DNA of 64,000 bases from Tetramitus jugosus (lineage: Eukaryota; Protista; Heterolobosea). Both the position numbers and the translations under genes were made by a program. The notes beneath the pieces were generated by a model. It was not told the origin of the DNA, did no database searches, and was given only the letters and a program-made list of their open reading frames with translations. The stretch lies in NCBI GenBank assembly GCA_937625935.1, contig OW569348.1:558001-622000 (forward strand), given 5' to 3'. This document shows positions 35,044 to 42,700 of the stretch, one piece after another (the first letter of the stretch is position 1; each line of letters begins with the position of its first letter).

Positions 35044-38000
35044 TTACAGTTGACTGTCCAAATCCATGAGTAACAATTGACGCACGTCAATGTCGTCCTT
35101 GTCGATCTTCGAGCCCTTGTACACCATGGATTGAATGTCCATCTTGAGTCCTGCAATCTGCAGAATACGCTCCTCTACAGTATTCTTGTTCACTAATCGC
35201 ATAACGGTTACCTTTCTCTTTTGACCAATACGATGAACTCTATCCATCGCTTGCGAGTCTAACGTCGGATTCCAATCACAATCATAGAAGATGACATGAT
35301 TCGCCCGTGTTAAATTGATACCAATACCACCAGCTCTTGTTGATAGCAGGAAAATGAATGTTCGATCCTCGGTGCTTTGGAACTTTTGTACAAAACCTTC
35401 TCTGACTTGAACGGGCGTACTGCCATCCATTCTCATAAAGCTATAATTTTTCATTGTACAATATGTCTCCAATAAGTCAAGCATACGAGTCATCTGACAG
35501 AATATGAGTACTTTGTTTGGTAGTCTGTTCTCTGGTTCTGGATCAATACGCAACTGATTCAAAATTCCATCCAGCAACCTCATCTTTGAGCATTGAGCCA
35601 CGAAGTTCCACACTTCTGGATGCCTTAATATGTTCCTATGTTCAACGAACACAGGCCTTAGTAGAGCTTGCTGTTGGAGAGAGTGTCTAATAACTGAGCA
35701 ATTCTCTTCGATTGGTGGTGATGCGACTTTAGCTGATACCAGCTCATGCACTCTGGGCGTGTATCGTAAACTCACACGCTCAACTAGTTCTTCCCTCATA
35801 TCATTTAAAATATCACCTTTCAATTCACGGTTAATGAATGAAACTGTGTTCACTGGGACGGTATAAGGCAACTCACGTGCAGCCTCTCTACAAAAACGAT
35901 TGCTCATAATTGGACCGGACTCAGCCATCATTTCCCAGTATATGACACTGGGTAGTTCGAACTTGATCGGATTACGCATCGAAGGCATAACCAATGGGTC
36001 AGACTCGCGGAATGGCAATGGCTCCTTGAATATGTATGGACTGGAGAAGTCCAAGCCACGAATTTGATGATTGGAAGCAATGTCAATAAATTGAGGCGGT
36101 ATCTCCTTCTCACCGTCGAGGAACAGGTAGGGATGATTACAAATCTTCCTCAGCTGCATGACTGTGTTGAATAGAGCACGTGTATTATTCTTCTTGTTCA
36201 AAGATTTTCTGTGACTCACAACCGTGTTTCTAATATCAATATACGCCTCTTTTTGTTGCTTGTTCACCTCACAGTGTAGAACCATTTCTTCTTTTGGTGC
36301 CAATTCACTCTCTACTTCAGTCTTCAAACGTCTAAGCATAAATGGTCTCAAAATCATATGCAATCTCTGTAGTTGCATCTCATCCAATTCGACCTTGTTC
36401 AAATTCTTCTTCTTTCCCTTGACACCTTCAGGTGTGAACCACTCTTCAAATTCATTCCTGTTGTCGAACAGTTTGGGCATGACAAAATGCAAAAGAGCCC
36501 AAAGTTCACCTAGATGGTTCTGAATGGGTGTACCTGTGAGCAACATTCTACCACGAACATCCAACTCGAGCAAGCGCTTCCATCTGACACTCTCACTCGA
36601 TTTAATCGCATGAGCCTCATCCAAAACCAAGAAGTGGAATTTGTGTTTGGACATGGTCTTAAAATCTTCAATAATCATACCATAGCTCGACAATATTACA
36701 TTGTATTCGTCATCCTTGATGCCAGCACGTAAAACCTTACGCTGCTGTGTACCGCCCCAATAAGGTAAAACCTTGAGCTGTGGACTAAACTTTGAAAATT
36801 CGGACAACCAATTATGCAGTGTCGTTGTCGGCGTAATGATCAAGAATGGATACTTGGGCTTATGTACATTGTTAATATAGGTCAGAAAGGCAATAGTTTG
36901 CACTGTCTTTCCGAGACCCATCTCATCACACAGCATACCATTGATACCCTGATCGTACAAGTTGACCAACCAATTCAAGGCTTGGAATTGATACTTTTTC
37001 AGCTTACCATGGAATCCTTTCGGCTCCGTAACAATCTCAGACGACGTTGTCTGATATTCATCGACTACGGAGGAGTTATCAGAAAAGTGATCCAAGCGCT
37101 CGCGCTCTGCACTGCTCGCTTTCAAGGCACGTTGTTTTGCACTTTCAAACTCGTCATCCTGCAACTCCTGTACAACCAATTCATTCTTGTCCACTGATCC
37201 ATCTGCCCCCGTATTCTTCTTGGCCATAAAGTGAGAGTACAACTCTGTTTGAGTCAACAAGAAGTTGAGTTTTCTGTCTTGTCGTTCCTTTTCGCGTCTC
37301 TCGGCCTCGTCACGAGAGGCCTTCTTCACACGTTCCACTTGTGCCTTCTCATGCTTTTTCCAAAATGCTTCAATCTCTGTCGCAATAGTCGCATTGATCG
37401 CTGCCTTCCCTGCACGAGATTTTCTCTGTTGTTGAGTTCGGCTACACAGCTCCATGATACGCTTCTGTGCCTGGAGAGCCAAGTTGAGACACATTTCTCT
37501 CCTCCTTCTACTCTTTTGAAATTGATCCTTGGTTGACTTGGGAGCACTCTTTGCTCGTGCTCTTCGATTGGCAGCAATTTGCTCTTGTCTCTGTCTACGC
37601 AGTGATTCCTCTGCATCGTGCAACTCCTTGGACAACAATTGTTGTTCCTGTTTATAGTTGATGAGAAATTGAGGAATAGATGGTCTTTCCATTCTTGCCT
37701 GTTGATAACTAAAAGACATGACATCGCCAAACAGTCGGTTCAATCGATCATCATTGTTCTGATACAGCTGTGATTGATCATATCTCATGTGATAACAGTC
37801 TTCTTCCAACCATGAGGAGGATGTAGATGATGTTAATGATGAAATGCGCCTGCGCTTCGATCCATCTACACCTCTCTTCCTATATTGACAAATAATGACA
37901 CTGGGTATGGTGCTTGATTGCTGTTGTTGTTGCTGTTCCATCAGCTTCTCCTCCTTTTCCAAATACTTGTCAAACTTTGAATTCACAAATTCATGTTCAT

Positions 38001-38601
38001 ACATTTCCTCTAGTATTGAGATGTTGTTTCCATTGTGAAAAACATGGTTATCACCATTGGTCAACAACCCATTCCCATTCTTACTATTATAGTTTTTGTT
38101 GTAGTCATCATCATCATCCGATTCTTCATCTTCTTCTTCATCTTCTTCAATGTCATCATCAGCACATAATTTCAACTGTTCTAACACTCCGAATGGGTTC
38201 CATATGCTTGATGCTGTTGTTGTTGTTGTTATCGCTTGTTGTGCATCCATCATCATCACAGCAGCAGCACTAGTGGTACTGTATTCATCATCACCACTAC
38301 CACTACCACTAGAACCAGAACCATTGGTATGATGATCATCATTACCAGTGTGGTGATGATGTGATTGCTGTTGTTGTTGAAGATGATAGTGATCTTGAAT
38401 GGTTGAAGCAGCGTTCACAAGAGCAGTGTATGACTCAAAAATGTAAGCTTGTTGCTCTTTTCGTGGTCTACCACATGATTCTCTCTTCCGTTTGTGTGAT
38501 GATGATGATTGTGCACCTGTTGTGGTAGAGGTTGTCGTAGTCGTAGTAGAGCTACTGCTACTTCGTCTCTTGTTGGTCGAAGTAGTCGTTGAGGTAGTCA
38601 T
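35044..38601 (-). CDS. INO80: Chromatin-remodelling ATPase INO80
   Basis: DBINO motif RKLNFLLTQTELYSHFM, plus DEMGLGKT, DEAH, LLTGTPIQN, a split helicase insert, LSTRAGGIGINL and QAMDRVHRIGQ. First ATG at 38601. Confidence 0.93.
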   Translation of the reverse strand: MTTSTTTSTNKRRSSSSSTTTTTTSTTTGAQSSSSHKRKRESCGRPRKEQQAYIFESYTALVNAASTIQDHYHLQQQQQSHHHHTGNDDHHTNGSGSSGSGSGDDEYSTTSAAAVMMMDAQQAITTTTTASSIWNPFGVLEQLKLCADDDIEEDEEEDEESDDDDDYNKNYNSKNGNGLLTNGDNHVFHNGNNISILEEMYEHEFVNSKFDKYLEKEEKLMEQQQQQQSSTIPSVIICQYRKRGVDGSKRRRISSLTSSTSSSWLEEDCYHMRYDQSQLYQNNDDRLNRLFGDVMSFSYQQARMERPSIPQFLINYKQEQQLLSKELHDAEESLRRQRQEQIAANRRARAKSAPKSTKDQFQKSRRRREMCLNLALQAQKRIMELCSRTQQQRKSRAGKAAINATIATEIEAFWKKHEKAQVERVKKASRDEAERREKERQDRKLNFLLTQTELYSHFMAKKNTGADGSVDKNELVVQELQDDEFESAKQRALKASSAERERLDHFSDNSSVVDEYQTTSSEIVTEPKGFHGKLKKYQFQALNWLVNLYDQGINGMLCDEMGLGKTVQTIAFLTYINNVHKPKYPFLIITPTTTLHNWLSEFSKFSPQLKVLPYWGGTQQRKVLRAGIKDDEYNVILSSYGMIIEDFKTMSKHKFHFLVLDEAHAIKSSESVRWKRLLELDVRGRMLLTGTPIQNHLGELWALLHFVMPKLFDNRNEFEEWFTPEGVKGKKKNLNKVELDEMQLQRLHMILRPFMLRRLKTEVESELAPKEEMVLHCEVNKQQKEAYIDIRNTVVSHRKSLNKKNNTRALFNTVMQLRKICNHPYLFLDGEKEIPPQFIDIASNHQIRGLDFSSPYIFKEPLPFRESDPLVMPSMRNPIKFELPSVIYWEMMAESGPIMSNRFCREAARELPYTVPVNTVSFINRELKGDILNDMREELVERVSLRYTPRVHELVSAKVASPPIEENCSVIRHSLQQQALLRPVFVEHRNILRHPEVWNFVAQCSKMRLLDGILNQLRIDPEPENRLPNKVLIFCQMTRMLDLLETYCTMKNYSFMRMDGSTPVQVREGFVQKFQSTEDRTFIFLLSTRAGGIGINLTRANHVIFYDCDWNPTLDSQAMDRVHRIGQKRKVTVMRLVNKNTVEERILQIAGLKMDIQSMVYKGSKIDKDDIDVRQLLLMDLDSQL

Positions 38602-39027
38602 TAATAATGTGTCTTTGTGTTTTTGTGATTTGTTGACGTGTGTTTGAAGCGATTGGAAGGTGGAAATTTTCTTCAAGTGCGAGGCATACAAATCACAAGA
38701 AAAAAAGCTACACGACCATCCATGCGTGAAGTCTTGGTCATGATAAAGCCAGATCCTTCATGTCGAAAACCAATGTTTTTTGCCCACCGCCAAAACTACG
38801 AGCATTTTCCCGGTTGAATATTGTCCGATAGATATTCATACAACCGAAGCAAACGTAAACAAAAATGAAAACATTTCCTTTTCGTCCACAAATGGATCAT
38901 TGTAATCTTGAGATAGAAGGGTATTTATATGTAAGGATCGGTTGTTTAACAAGTTAAAAGGTTGAACTATGCCTTTGACATTATCAAAACAAAACAACGT
39001 AAGCACTTTAGACAACAAATAGAAAGT

Positions 39028-39672
39028 ATGGGAGGCTGGATATCAATCAATCTTCCATTATGTTTTCCTGGGGATGCTCAGGTACAATTAAAGAACGGAC
39101 AACCAAAGAGAATGGATCAACTGCAATTGGGAGACCAAGTGCTCGTTGCAAGGAAGGACGGATCATTGTGCTATGACTCAGTGTATTCGTTCATTCACAG
39201 AGAAGAGAACACTTCTGCTACCTATAGAGAAATTTATGCCAGTGATCTCAAGATTACTCTATCGGACTATCATTTGATTTATAGAGTGTCTGCTCAGACA
39301 GAGAAGGGCTATGAGGTCGTACCGGCTCAGGAGATTAAGCTCAATGACCAACTATTCCTAGTCCGGAATGGTAGAGTTCTTTCTCAGCATGTCACCCACA
39401 TTGTTGATGAGGTATCGAAGGTCGGAGTCTATGCACCAGTGACATTCAATGGTTCTATTGTGGTTGATGGAGTAGTGGCTTCATGCTATGCTCAATATGA
39501 TAAGATCAAGAGCCAAAGGGTTGCTCATGCGGTGATGATGCCTCTGAGAATGAGAGCGAAGATGAGAACAACCCCTCTAGAACAAACCGAGATGGGAGAA
39601 GGTTGGAACAGGTATTGCTTGGTCTTGGGAAAGGGAGTATATCCTGTGTACAAATTAATTAGCTCAAGTTAA
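39028..39672 (+). CDS. Hedgehog-type Hint (Hog) autoprocessing protein with an 11-aa N-terminal extein
   Basis: CFPGDAQV..MDQLQLGDQVL, FIHR, LSDYHLIY and GVYAPVTFNGSIVVDGVVASCYA, followed by an SRR-like segment VAHAVMMPLR..GWNRYCLVL. First ATG at 39028; nucleophilic Cys codon at 39061. Confidence 0.88.
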   Translation: MGGWISINLPLCFPGDAQVQLKNGQPKRMDQLQLGDQVLVARKDGSLCYDSVYSFIHREENTSATYREIYASDLKITLSDYHLIYRVSAQTEKGYEVVPAQEIKLNDQLFLVRNGRVLSQHVTHIVDEVSKVGVYAPVTFNGSIVVDGVVASCYAQYDKIKSQRVAHAVMMPLRMRAKMRTTPLEQTEMGEGWNRYCLVLGKGVYPVYKLISSS

Positions 39673-39729
39673 CCAATACTTGAACATTTTTAACGAATTG
39701 TAAATACACCACACATCTTGTAAATTACT

Positions 39730-42700
39730 TCATAGTCTGTTCTCTTGCATCTTTTCGAGCAACTTATTGTACCCGCTACTGATGGTATTGGTGATATCTT
39801 TGATCTCTCGTGATATCACAGCTTGACTATCAGAGCATTGAAATAGATTCACGACCTTCAAACAATACGCCATCCATTGTTCAGCCTTGTCTAATCTCTG
39901 GAGTTTGAAAAAGTAAACACTGTTGTTCCATGCTTTGGTAATCAACAGTCTCAACAACTTTGCCACACTTTCATTCTCGTCATATTCTTGACTATAATGC
40001 GTACTGAGAACTGAATAGAGCGATTCAAATGGCGAGTAAGAATCTTCTCTCAATTTACATCCATCAATCCACAATCGATGATAATTGATGATCGATTTGA
40101 GATCGATACTTTTGCTCTCGATACCTTTCTGTATACAATATCTCAGCACATCATTAGCCAACTCCGTATACATCGAGCAGGAACAATTCTCACTACTAAT
40201 CATGTAAGCAAACAAGCGAAAGAGTTTCAAGTCTGCAGTAGGTTCTGACCTAGCTTCTTCCAACACCTTCCCTAGCTCTTTTGGATCCAATTTCAGCATT
40301 ATTTTGCACTGGTATTCGCAGAGTAGCACGAGAGGAATTGATTTATCCTCTTCAATTTTTCGAAGTTTTTCTAATCTATCGTACTCATTGTCGTTCGATG
40401 CAGATTCTTCAGACACCATCCTTCTCTTGATCTCCTTGATCTTTTCAGAGTATTGCTTGCACATACTGATCTCTTGGACAGTGAGCTCCAGTTTTTGGAT
40501 TGATTCTTGGACTTCGAACTTTGCGTGGAGATCTTGAGAAATCTTAAGAAGGCAGAATACTCTAATCAACATACAATTTCTCTGTGTTTCGAGAATCTTC
40601 AATGAAAATTGTCTGTATCGTGCGAAGTCTGTTGTGAATTTAAGAAGTATGTATGCTCTTTCCCAATCTTGATTCTGTTTTCCATACATTAGGGCAGTGT
40701 TCCATGCTAGAACATAAAACCATTCTATCTCTTCGTCAAAGTTCTTCCTGAAAATTTCTTTCACTCCGAGAGCGTACAACATTTCCATCATTGTTCTTAG
40801 GTAATGAATTAGCTTATCTACCTCTCCCAATTGTTTGCACAATAGACATATGTTTCGAAGTATTAGCCCTTTATCCTTAGGATCAATGTTAGACTTGGTG
40901 GTCAACAAGGTTTCCAAGGCCTCAAGTGCAATCAGATCACACCCAACTTCGTGAGCGTCATGAGCTGCCAAAGCAAAAACTCCTGCTTGAAAGTTCTCCG
41001 CATCGACCATCTTCTTCAGATAGAGACTCGCTTTCGTTACATCTTTCATCTGGATGAATATTTTGAAGAACTCATACATCGTTTGCTGGGAATTGGGATC
41101 CAACGCTTCAACATCGCTGGCAACCATTTCTGCTTCTTGAGGTCTCTTCAGATTCAGATAACATCGGGACATAAATCTCAGGATTTTTGCTCTATTGAAC
41201 GAATCATCAGTAGGCAGGAGTTTGATAGAGTATTGAAACCAAATGAGAGAGTCCTCATAACATTTCTCTTCATAGAGTGTGACAGCTTGATTCCAAACGA
41301 GGATATGGAAATCTTTCAACATCTCATTGTTCAATATGATGGAGTTTTGGGATATATTTGTTATCACGAGTTCGAGTACATGCTTGGCTCTATGTAGTCC
41401 ATTGTCAGAATCACCACGTAGAAGATATTCCACGTAAGCGAGTGTTACCATCTGGTTTCTATCATCTCCAGAGCCTGAATAGAGGTCTAAGAGTTTCTGG
41501 TATGCTTGCTCTACGAGTACGTGAACCTTGTACTGCGATGCCATTTGGCACAGGGACAGAGATATGTTCACTGGTGTTTCAGCAGAGTTGATTGCTTCCA
41601 TTACTACAGTGATTGCTTCCGTTTCTCTATTCATCAGAAAAAAAATCTTTGCTAAGATGTAGAGTCCAGAATGATTCTTACACTTTTCGTTTGCCATTTG
41701 ACAGCACGTTAGGGCATTTTCAAAGTTTTGAAGTTCGAGGTAGCAACTTGACATTAATCTCAGTACTCTAGCATGTCGAGAAGTATCTGTAGTGCAGTGC
41801 TCAAGTATTTCAAGTGACTCCCGTAACCAATCAATTGCATTCTGGAAGTCATTATGCTCATGCAGATCGACAGCAAAATTAAAAGCAAGAAGACCAAGCC
41901 GGTTCATTTCGCTAGACGCCAACTTTCGAATCAAGCCTTTGGATTCTCTGCATAAACTGAGAGCCACTTCTTTCGCACCACATCTCCACAACTGAAACAC
42001 AATATCATCAGATAAACAATGAATACAATACCATCATTGACAACAAACAATCAAAGAAGCGGACAGAAGGCATACATTTTCTATTCTACAAATAGTAGTG
42101 TTCACCATTGCTCGATACTCTTCTTGTGTTACGACTGAATCTGAAGACTCATTTTTCATTACCTTGTCAATGTACTATGAACGTGTGAAATAAAACCTTT
42201 GTAAGTAAACGAACCGATGTGAGAGCGCCAACAACAACAAAAGACTTGTCTTACCATCATGGCATGTTTGAATGCTTGTTCAGCCTTCTCATACTCTCCA
42301 ACCATTCCCCACTCTCTACCTATTCTGCACAATAGCTCTGCTACTTTAATATTCCTTTTCACTCCATGATTCACATAATCATCAGCTTCCAACCATCCAA
42401 TAGTGATCAAATCACATGCCAAAACTCTTAACTGGATCATCATCAAGGTGTGTGGAAGTGCGGATGAAACCACAGTGGAATTCGACGAGGAATACTTGAC
42501 ACAAGCATTCCAACATAGGCCACCGCTCTTCTTGAGAGTGTCTCTATGAAGCTTCTTGTGAGTCAGTAGAGCTGACAGGGGAGAATTCATGAGTGAGTCA
42601 ACAAGTGATCTCATGATTGAAAACTTTTCTTGCAGGATCTTTTGGCATTCTTCACTGTGAACAACTGCACGATCAAGCTTTGTGGAAAAGTCTAAAGAGA

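What the first reader, a model, noticed from the sequence alone, without database searches (positions are those of the whole stretch)
39028..39672. Hedgehog-type autoprocessor carrying only an 11-residue cargo: candidate doubly lipidated micropeptide
Seen: MGGWISINLPL|CFPG.. followed by a full Hint domain and an SRR-like tail, with no signal peptide or signalling domain; the start fits the MGxxxS N-myristoylation consensus. Known: Hog domains cleave before this Cys and attach sterol to the new C-terminus. Inference: the product could be myristoyl-GGWISINLPL-sterol, a ribosomally made lipopeptide mimicking the dual lipidation of Hedgehog, or the protein acts as a cytosolic sterol sensor. Deviations (L at -1 instead of G, SxxH for TxxH, H for the Hedgehog general-base Asp) could change the nucleophile or reduce activity.
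Basis: partly seen in the sequence, partly recalled or inferred. Interest (0 to 1): 0.8.

Follow-up and report, generated by a model that had tools for sequence, protein, structure and literature searches.

The report
Stand-alone Hedgehog-type self-cutter, 11-residue cargo
A soil amoeba carries a small, conserved gene that is nothing but the self-cutting, lipid-attaching half of the Hedgehog protein preceded by only eleven amino acids, so its product is probably a tiny lipid-tagged peptide made inside the cell rather than a secreted signalling protein.

Summary
It matches Pfam Hint/Hog (PF01079, E=7e-41), and its AlphaFold model (pLDDT 90) superposes on Drosophila Hedgehog-C at 1.4 Å. Only 11 residues (MGGWISINLPL) precede the catalytic Cys.

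The tiny cargo is a family trait, not an annotation artefact. A paralogue in this genome, a syntenic orthologue and three metagenomic relatives form one supported clade with 5-12-residue cargoes. In three of them an in-frame stop with no usable AG before the Cys codon rules out an upstream exon. Gly2 is kept in 4 of 6 clade members and in a second tiny-cargo clade, but the paralogue lacks it.

The Asp-to-His swap is experimentally active in Drosophila.

Cleavage, the sterol adduct and myristoylation are inferred, not shown. RNA evidence covers only the 3' half of the gene. Secreted "Short-hog" and "Hog-only" proteins are known in nematodes. I found no description of a signal-less, Met-Gly-initiated class.

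The scan also flagged the paralogue on other DNA of this genome (s1-553324).

Verdict: a new variant of a known kind; interest 0.7.

The parts
39028..39672 (+). Complete single-exon coding sequence, 214 codons plus TAA: stand-alone Hog protein
   Evidence: ORF and translation; Pfam PF01079 E=7e-41; AF2 pLDDT 90.1; Foldseek 6TYY/1AT0 TM 0.93
39028..39060 (+). N-extein ('cargo'), 11 codons MGGWISINLPL; Gly2 and Ser6 fit the N-myristoylation pattern; uncharged and hydrophobic (GRAVY 0.90 without Met)
   Evidence: conserved as MGGFFSIGLRL (P0001), MGGWCSIGLS (P0008), MRHGWVSINFPL (paralogue)
39061..39063 (+). TGT codon of Cys12, the predicted nucleophile for the N-to-S acyl shift; the scissile bond is Leu11-Cys12
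   Evidence: aligned to Cys1 of Drosophila Hh-C; invariant in 34-sequence alignment A2
39061..39492 (+). Hint module (residues 12-155), all-beta; contains His57 (39196-39198, position of Drosophila D46/D303), Ser79-x-x-His82 (39262-39273) and the S-C153-Y-A motif (Cys codon 39484-39486)
39493..39669 (+). SRR/ARR-like tail (residues 156-214): helices at 163-179 and 195-213. AH..P.R motif kept; the Hedgehog 'HWY' hinge reads W-N-R-Y; Cys197 is invariant within the clade
38602..39027 (.). 426-nt A-rich intergenic leader shared with the divergently transcribed upstream gene. In-frame TAA at 38947. No coding conservation with relatives. The second haplotype carries indels here (38940, 39012).
35044..38601 (-). 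Upstream neighbour: large SNF2/INO80-like helicase ORF, divergent (family named from the translation only, not scanned). It leaves no room for a large upstream exon.
   Evidence: RNA-library contigs reach 38587
39730..42000 (-). Downstream neighbour: SPO22/ZIP4 meiosis gene, convergent, ending 58 nt after the Hog stop. The same neighbour lies next to orthologue P0001.
   Evidence: Pfam PF08631 E=7.9e-22; synteny in L003

Best explanation
This is a real, constrained, single-exon gene for a cytosolic, stand-alone Hog protein whose only 'cargo' is the first 11 residues. Shown: the fold and every catalytic position of Hedgehog-C are present, the tiny cargo and its sequence are conserved, and the cargo cannot be extended in relatives. 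Inferred mechanism, in four steps. (1) The initiator Met is removed and Gly2 is probably N-myristoylated co-translationally. (2) The Hint module shifts the Leu11-Cys12 peptide bond to a thioester (Cys12, Ser79, His82). (3) A hydroxyl nucleophile held by the helical tail and activated by His57, most likely a membrane sterol, attacks the thioester. (4) This releases a 10-residue hydrophobic peptide esterified at its C-terminus, and so lipidated at both ends if step 1 occurs, plus the spent 203-residue Hog domain. My odds: self-cleavage-competent Hog with a genuine 11-residue cargo 0.8; adduct is a sterol 0.45; Gly2 is myristoylated 0.45; both on one peptide about 0.25-0.3.
For: Pfam Hint 140.6 bits. 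The phmmer alignment starts at Cys1 of Hh-C. AF2 pLDDT 90.1, pTM 0.87. Foldseek best hits are 6TYY and 1AT0, TM 0.93, rmsd 1.4-1.5 Å. Cys12, His82, Ser152 and Gly/Pro/Thr core positions are invariant, and His57, Cys153, His167, Pro172 and Arg174 are at least 90% conserved in A2. The clade of six tiny-cargo proteins has support 96/88. In-frame stops with no AG before the Cys codon occur in L003, L013 and L017/L018; L012 has one AG, inside the cargo codons. There is no conserved upstream coding sequence, while the first 150 nt of the CDS match at 1e-10 to 1e-23. dN/dS is 0.12-0.30 where computable. Soil metatranscriptome contigs cover 39289-39703 and 39372-39566. The myristoylation pattern is met by the window protein, P0001, P0008, P0017 (MGICC, with Cys next to Gly as in dual-acylated proteins) and P0026. 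NMT is present, as are an oxidosqualene-cyclase-type gene and a sterol methyltransferase. The D303H swap in Drosophila Hh-C keeps its structure and activity and widens sterol tolerance (review PMC9163320; PDB 6TYY is that mutant).
Against: No biochemical evidence exists for cleavage, adduct or acylation. The 5' end of the transcript was not seen: there was no RNA-library coverage of 38588-39259, those libraries may contain DNA, and in the window itself 73 GT-AG combinations could in principle add up to 55 residues. The paralogue and P0016 lack Gly2. The Hedgehog HWY hinge of the sterol pocket is not conserved (W-N-R-Y here), so the adduct may not be a sterol. Sterol transfer is demonstrated only for true Hedgehogs (PMC2362128). 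Residues 1-6 are disordered in the model. Absence of a signal peptide was judged by eye only.
Confidence: 0.55

Rival explanations
1. Sterol-triggered switch. The myristoylated hydrophobic N-terminus is only a membrane anchor that holds the Hog domain at the cytosolic leaflet. Sterol-dependent self-cleavage is the point of the protein: it releases or destroys the 203-residue domain (whose new N-terminal Cys could act as a degron), so the protein reports or buffers membrane sterol. The peptide is a by-product.
For: There is no signalling domain. The Hog domain is at least as conserved as the peptide. The clade has an invariant Cys197 and tail motifs absent from Hedgehog. The cargo shrinks to 5 residues in P0017, which is hard to see as an information-bearing peptide.
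Against: The cargo sequence GW(I/V)SIN(L/F)PL is kept even in the paralogue that has lost Gly2. This argues that the peptide itself, not just an acyl anchor, is under selection. No partner or effector surface is known for a free Hog domain.
Confidence: 0.2
2. Self-cleavage with a non-sterol acceptor. The thioester is resolved by water, by another small alcohol or lipid, or by an amine on a protein or lipid, as in the intein-like BUBL proteins of Tetrahymena that conjugate their cargo to other molecules.
For: The tail differs from the Hedgehog SRR at the HWY hinge. Burglin's 'adduct recognition region' caveat applies (PMC2362128). The Tetrahymena BIL2 domain is the next-best structural match. 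His at the base position widens substrate tolerance in Drosophila Hh-C (PMC9163320).
Against: The helix-loop-helix tail and the AH..P.R motif are homologous to the SRR. The match to Hh-C (TM 0.93) is much closer than to BIL (TM about 0.72). Sterol synthesis genes are present.
Confidence: 0.15
3. The true protein is longer: an unrecognised upstream exon, or a non-canonical start, adds a larger N-terminal domain or a signal peptide.
For: The 5' end of the mRNA was not observed. AG dinucleotides lie upstream (39021, 39025 and others), and open GT-AG combinations exist.
Against: Only 426 nt separate the ATG from the divergent upstream gene. The best hypothetical exon adds 55 non-conserved residues. 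Relatives L003, L013 and L017/18 have in-frame stops with no AG before the Cys codon. The candidate acceptors in the window and the paralogue are in different phases. DNA haplotypes carry 1-nt and 3-nt indels in the leader, and none are listed inside the CDS.
Confidence: 0.05
4. An inactive relic: a Hog domain that lost its cargo and is drifting.
For: C. elegans hog-1 is thought to have arisen by loss of the N-terminal domain (PMC2362128).
Against: All catalytic residues are intact. dN/dS is well below 1. Two paralogues have been kept since before the split from the P0001 species. Synteny is conserved. The gene appears in RNA libraries.
Confidence: 0.03

Closest known systems
Hedgehog C-terminal autoprocessing domain (Drosophila Hh-C; PDB 1AT0, and 6TYY = D46H mutant)
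   Same: Same fold (TM 0.93, rmsd 1.4 Å). Same catalytic Cys1, [S/T]xxH and SCYA Cys, and a homologous helical tail. The natural His57 equals the engineered, active D46H/D303H variant (PMC9163320).
   Different: No Hedge signalling domain and no signal peptide, so it is cytosolic rather than in the ER lumen. The cargo is 11 residues. Leu rather than Gly at -1. The HWY hinge of the sterol pocket is replaced. The tail is shorter (59 residues).
Nematode 'Short-hog' and 'Hog-only' proteins (Xiphinema Shog1/Shog2, Trichinella Xhog3, C. elegans hog-1; Burglin 2008, PMC2362128)
   Same: Hog domains with very short predicted N-terminal products (15, 25 and 34 residues) or none.
   Different: Those have signal peptides and are secreted animal proteins derived from Hh-related genes. 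This class has no signal peptide and a Met-Gly start, occurs in protists, and forms a separate clade.
GmGIN1 of Glomus mosseae (GTPase-Hog fusion without signal peptide; cited in PMC2362128)
   Same: A precedent for a Hog domain working in the cytosol without secretion.
   Different: GIN1 carries a large GTPase cargo; here the cargo is a peptide.
Cytosolically made lipopeptide signals such as fungal a-factor, and dually acylated MGC-type N-termini (own knowledge)
   Same: A short hydrophobic peptide made in the cytosol and lipidated. P0017's MGICC resembles myristoyl-plus-palmitoyl motifs.
   Different: The chemistry differs: prenylation and carboxymethylation, or thio-acylation by separate enzymes, against a self-catalysed C-terminal ester. 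This is an analogy only.
Inteins and bacterial-intein-like (BIL/BUBL) domains
   Same: Hint fold and an N-terminal thioester step.
   Different: No C-extein and no terminal Asn cyclisation. Structural similarity is much weaker (TM 0.7-0.8 by target) than to Hh-C.

Membership tests
Hog domain (Hint + SRR/ARR), Pfam PF01079 | Profile match above the curated cut-off | tested here: met
   140.6 bits against 29.7, E=7e-41, residues 11-192
Hog domain (Hint + SRR/ARR), Pfam PF01079 | Catalytic Cys as first residue of the Hint module | tested here: met
   Cys12 aligns with Cys1 of 1AT0/6TYY; invariant in A2
Hog domain (Hint + SRR/ARR), Pfam PF01079 | Block B [T/S]xxH | tested here: met
   S79-D-Y-H82; His invariant; Ser in 87 and Thr in 75 of 165 relatives
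Hog domain (Hint + SRR/ARR), Pfam PF01079 | General base at the Drosophila D46/D303 position | tested here: met
   His57; His in 124 and Asp in 35 of 165 relatives; D303H is active in Drosophila Hh-C (PMC9163320)
Hog domain (Hint + SRR/ARR), Pfam PF01079 | SCYA motif Cys (Drosophila C143/C400) | tested here: met
   S152-C153-Y-A
Hog domain (Hint + SRR/ARR), Pfam PF01079 | Hint fold | tested here: met
   AF2 pLDDT 90.1; Foldseek 6TYY/1AT0 TM 0.93
Hog domain (Hint + SRR/ARR), Pfam PF01079 | C-terminal sterol/adduct recognition helices | tested here: inconclusive
   Helices at 163-179 and 195-213, and the AH..P.R motif is kept. The HWY hinge is replaced by W-N-R-Y, so the ligand is unknown.
Hog domain (Hint + SRR/ARR), Pfam PF01079 | Self-cleavage with transfer of the N-terminal fragment to an adduct | not testable with these tools
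   Needs biochemistry
Hedgehog proper (Hedge + Hog, secreted morphogen) | N-terminal Hedge signalling domain | tested here: not met
   Only 11 residues precede Cys12; Pfam finds Hint alone
Hedgehog proper (Hedge + Hog, secreted morphogen) | Signal peptide / ER entry | tested here: not met
   By inspection only, with no predictor available. Residues from Cys12 on form the Hint fold's first strand, and P0017 has just 5 residues before its Cys.
Inteins | C-terminal Asn plus a downstream C-extein nucleophile for splicing | tested here: not met
   The Hint module is followed by the helical tail and the stop codon. The best relatives are Hh-C, not inteins.
N-myristoyltransferase substrates | Gly2 and the pattern G-{EDRKHPFYW}-x(2)-[STAGCN]-{P} | tested here: met
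   G-G-W-I-S-I passes
N-myristoyltransferase substrates | The enzyme is encoded by the organism | tested here: met
   PF01233 206.5 bits on contig C35
N-myristoyltransferase substrates | Motif conserved in relatives | tested here: inconclusive
   Kept in P0001, P0008, P0017 and P0026. Lost in the paralogue, P0016 and P0099/L021. P0084 has Gly2 but fails the pattern.
N-myristoyltransferase substrates | Acyl group actually attached | not testable with these tools
   Needs mass spectrometry or metabolic labelling

The most novel reading that the evidence does not exclude
Free-living amoebae and other protists make, in the cytosol and from a dedicated single-use enzyme, a ribosomally encoded peptide of about 10 residues that carries a myristoyl group at one end and a sterol ester at the other. 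This would be a minimal 'Hedgehog without the Hedge', acting as a membrane-resident or exported lipopeptide signal. Tiny-cargo Hogs of this kind, rather than secreted morphogen precursors, would then be close to the ancestral use of the Hog domain.
Probability: 0.2. Interest if true: 0.9.

Novelty: new variant of a known kind. Interest (0 to 1): 0.7.

Why it matters
Covalent sterol attachment to a polypeptide is regarded as unique to Hedgehog-family proteins in animals, and what Hog domains do outside animals is an open question. This small, intron-less gene has all catalytic residues, no signal peptide and a conserved 5-12-residue cargo, which makes it a very simple experimental system. One recombinant protein and a handful of sterols would show whether protist Hog domains esterify sterols. 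A peptide of predictable mass could then be sought directly in cells. If the product exists, it would be a new class of ribosomally made lipopeptide. It would also show that Hedgehog-type lipidation can operate in the cytosol, and that His at the general-base position, engineered in Drosophila, is the widespread natural state.

Tried and rejected
1. Reading the 5' end of the transcript from public runs. Only assembled contigs were available. Two soil metatranscriptomes cover the 3' half, and nothing covers 38588-39259, so the start stays unobserved.

2. Scanning JGI metagenome contigs for more clade members. Only distant relatives (39% identity or less) with long cargoes came back, apart from L021.

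3. A second word search with the paralogue found no new close relatives.

4. Identifying the source of orthologue P0001 (GCA_037189345.1) through the paper library gave no hit. I did not establish the identity of the window's organism. Other notes of this scan call it a heterolobosean amoeba.

5. Zhao et al. 2019 (PMC7106946) is not held, so I used the review PMC9163320 instead.

6. The ESM Atlas feature search returned only generic Hint clusters.

7. dN/dS: synonymous sites are saturated for two of the four pairs.

8. A functional link to the neighbouring meiosis gene SPO22/ZIP4 was considered and rejected. The synteny holds only for the nearest orthologue, and P0008 and P0016 have other neighbours.

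9. The idea that many short database hits are the same class was rejected. Most are exon-3 fragments of animal Hedgehog genes ending ...SSIAxKTGG|CF.

Full report
**1. What is in the sequence**

window:39028-39672 (+) is an uninterrupted 214-codon ORF that starts MGGWISINLPL-CFPGD and ends at TAA.
- Pfam finds one domain, Hint/Hog PF01079: 140.6 bits against a cut-off of 29.7, E=7e-41, residues 11-192.
- Against solved structures, the best sequence matches are Drosophila Hedgehog chains. The alignment to the isolated C-terminal domain starts exactly at Cys12 = Cys1.
- An AlphaFold2 model built on a 34-sequence alignment is confident (pLDDT 90.1, pTM 0.87). Only residues 1-6 are disordered. It shows an all-beta disc followed by helices at 163-179 and 195-213.
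- Foldseek places the model on 6TYY and 1AT0 (Drosophila Hh-C) with target-normalised TM 0.93 and rmsd 1.4-1.5 Å. The Tetrahymena BIL domain and inteins follow well behind.

**2. Is the 11-residue cargo real?**

The gene sits in a slot of about 1 kb.
- Upstream, a large SNF2/INO80-like ORF runs on the other strand. RNA-library contigs of that gene reach 38587. This leaves 426 nt of A-rich leader.
- Downstream, a SPO22/ZIP4 gene (Pfam E=7.9e-22) converges and ends 58 nt after the stop codon.
- In the window an in-frame TAA lies at 38947, and several AGs follow it. A brute-force search finds 73 GT-AG combinations that stay open into Cys12, the longest adding 55 residues. The window alone therefore cannot exclude an upstream exon.

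Comparison with relatives can exclude it.
- The genome has exactly two Hint loci. The paralogue (L001:1468-2130, 54% identical) begins MRHGWVSINFPL-CFPGD.
- P0001, from an NCBI assembly, is 214 aa and begins MGGFFSIGLRL-CFPGD. It has the same SPO22 neighbour on the opposite strand, so it is a syntenic orthologue.
- P0008 begins MGGWCSIGLS-CFPGE, P0016 begins MPYLSLSCRI-CFPGE, and P0017 begins MGICC-CFSPD.
- In L003 (P0001) a TAA lies two codons before the ATG, and there is no AG anywhere before the Cys codon.
- L013 (P0017) and L017/L018 (P0026, MGLYVGF-CFPAD) show the same, and L012 (P0016) has a single AG, which lies inside the cargo codons.
- Upstream regions of family members share no coding similarity (tblastx finds nothing better than E 0.4). 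The first 150 nt of the coding regions match at 1e-10 to 1e-23.
- The nearest AGs before the ATG in the window and in the paralogue would be in different intron phases.
- DNA runs of the source organism show a second haplotype with 1-nt and 3-nt indels and clustered SNPs in the leader. No indel is listed inside the CDS, and no difference in its first 290 nt.

I conclude that the short cargo is genuine.

**3. Family and evolution**

A profile of the four closest proteins was searched against 1.84 billion representatives and found 7,928 Hog proteins. The top hits are P0001, P0002 (a fragment of the P0008 cluster), P0016 and P0017. After them come long, Hedgehog-sized proteins.

A maximum-likelihood tree groups the window protein, P0001 (its sister), the paralogue, P0008, P0016 and P0017 with support 96/88.
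- All six have cargoes of 5-12 residues.
- The duplication that gave the two copies in this genome predates the split from the P0001 species.
- A neighbouring clade (P0026, P0084 MGWWIIPL, P0099 and L021 MPGHQxDGC) also has tiny cargoes and comes from contigs of about 50% GC. These are therefore different organisms.
- Gly2 occurs in 4 of 6 members of the first clade and 2 of 3 of the second. The simplest reading is an ancestral Met-Gly start lost three times.
- Where synonymous distance is not saturated, dN/dS is 0.12-0.30.

Many other short database entries are not this class. They are exon-3 fragments of animal Hedgehog genes.

**4. The 'deviations'**

I aligned the 165 nearest Hog proteins to the profile.
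- The residue at the Drosophila D46/D303 position is His in 124 and Asp in 35.
- The first residue of block B is Ser in 87 and Thr in 75.
- The -1 residue is Gly in only 51 of 150, with Leu second at 16.

The engineered D303H Drosophila domain keeps its structure and activity and accepts a wider range of sterols (review PMC9163320). One of the two best structural matches, 6TYY, is that mutant.

The real difference lies in the tail. The Hedgehog HWY hinge, which lines the cholesterol pocket (PMC7906309), reads W-N-R-Y here, and the clade has an invariant Cys197. Burglin called this region in non-Hedgehog Hogs an 'adduct recognition region' because the adduct is unknown (PMC2362128).

**5. Mechanism**

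Shown: the fold, the catalytic residues, the conserved tiny cargo, and presence in RNA libraries. Soil metatranscriptome contigs of 415 nt (39289-39703) and 195 nt (39372-39566) match at 97-99% identity. Such libraries can contain DNA.

Inferred: an N-to-S acyl shift at Leu11-Cys12, then attack of the thioester by a hydroxyl nucleophile, most likely a sterol. The genome encodes an oxidosqualene-cyclase-type enzyme and a sterol methyltransferase.

Also inferred: N-myristoylation of Gly2.
- The N-terminus passes the PROSITE-type pattern, as do P0001, P0008, P0017 and P0026.
- NMT is encoded in the genome.
- P0017's MGICC resembles classical myristoyl-plus-palmitoyl motifs.
- Against an obligatory role, the paralogue and P0016 lack Gly2. 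The paralogue nevertheless keeps the core GW(I/V)SIN(L/F)PL, which suggests that the peptide sequence itself matters.

The cargoes are hydrophobic and nearly uncharged.

**6. Comparison with what is known**

Burglin (2008) described 'Short-hog' proteins in Enoplea nematodes with predicted products of 15-34 residues. He also described a 'Hog-only' gene in C. elegans. The short-cargo proteins he describes in detail carry signal peptides. He reported GmGIN1 as a Hog protein without a signal peptide but with a GTPase cargo, and found no Hog in Dictyostelium.

Two full-text searches for Hog or Hint domains together with myristoylation, or in amoebae, found no description of a signal-less, Met-Gly-initiated tiny-cargo class.

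The protein is a member of the Hog family. It is not a Hedgehog and not an intein. I class it as a new variant of a known kind.

**7. Context from the scan**

Another first-stage note (s1-553324) flagged the paralogue with the same reading, so the scan found this thing twice in one genome. Other follow-up notes call the organism a heterolobosean soil amoeba (Tetramitus jugosus). I did not test that. It fits the soil metatranscriptome hits and the intron-poor, 41% GC, 26-Mb genome.

**8. Limits**
- There is no biochemistry.
- The 5' end of the mRNA was not observed.
- No signal-peptide or myristoylation predictor was available.
- The clade is small: six proteins, plus three or four in the second clade. 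Its members are related, so counts of Gly2 are not independent.

Noticed in passing
L028:1375-1854 and L031:1386-1868 (JGI metagenome contigs): Hog domains whose upstream cargo ends with a subtilisin-like protease domain (a GTSMATPH serine motif about 70 residues before the CFPGE cleavage site). These look like protease-Hog fusions, which would give a lipid-anchored protease.
   Followed up: no
window 38940-39012 and 39321-39415: DNA runs of the source organism (X21, X22) carry a second haplotype. It has a 1-nt deletion at 38940, a 3-nt deletion at 39012 and SNPs at 38986-38989 in the leader. It also has a few mostly conservative substitutions in loop residues 98-130 of the Hog protein. The source is therefore heterozygous or a strain mixture.
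   Followed up: partly
L013:1-30 versus L013:57-86: The first 22 or so bases of this 955-nt contig repeat the start of the P0017 coding sequence (GGGCATTTGTTGTTGTTTTTCT...). This is either an assembly artefact or a short tandem duplication of the cargo-coding segment.
   Followed up: no
window 39616-39618 (Cys197) and the equivalent position in L001, P0001, P0008, P0016, P0017: A Cys in the last helix of the tail (motif G-x-N-x-Y-C) is invariant in the tiny-cargo clade, where Hedgehog has Ala (HWYA). It could be a clade-specific catalytic or acylation site.
   Followed up: no
G000:C35:116549-116956 and G000:C10:64224-64847: There are two NMT-like loci. The strong one (206 bits) has two stops inside the match, so it holds an intron or is broken. 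The second lies in a 596-aa open frame and matches more weakly.
   Followed up: no
window 35044-38601 (-): The large SNF2/INO80-like helicase ORF has long Thr/Ser/Gln/His/Asp low-complexity runs at its N-terminus. Soil RNA-library contigs over this part show 3- and 6-nt length variants in the repeats (38211-38583).
   Followed up: no
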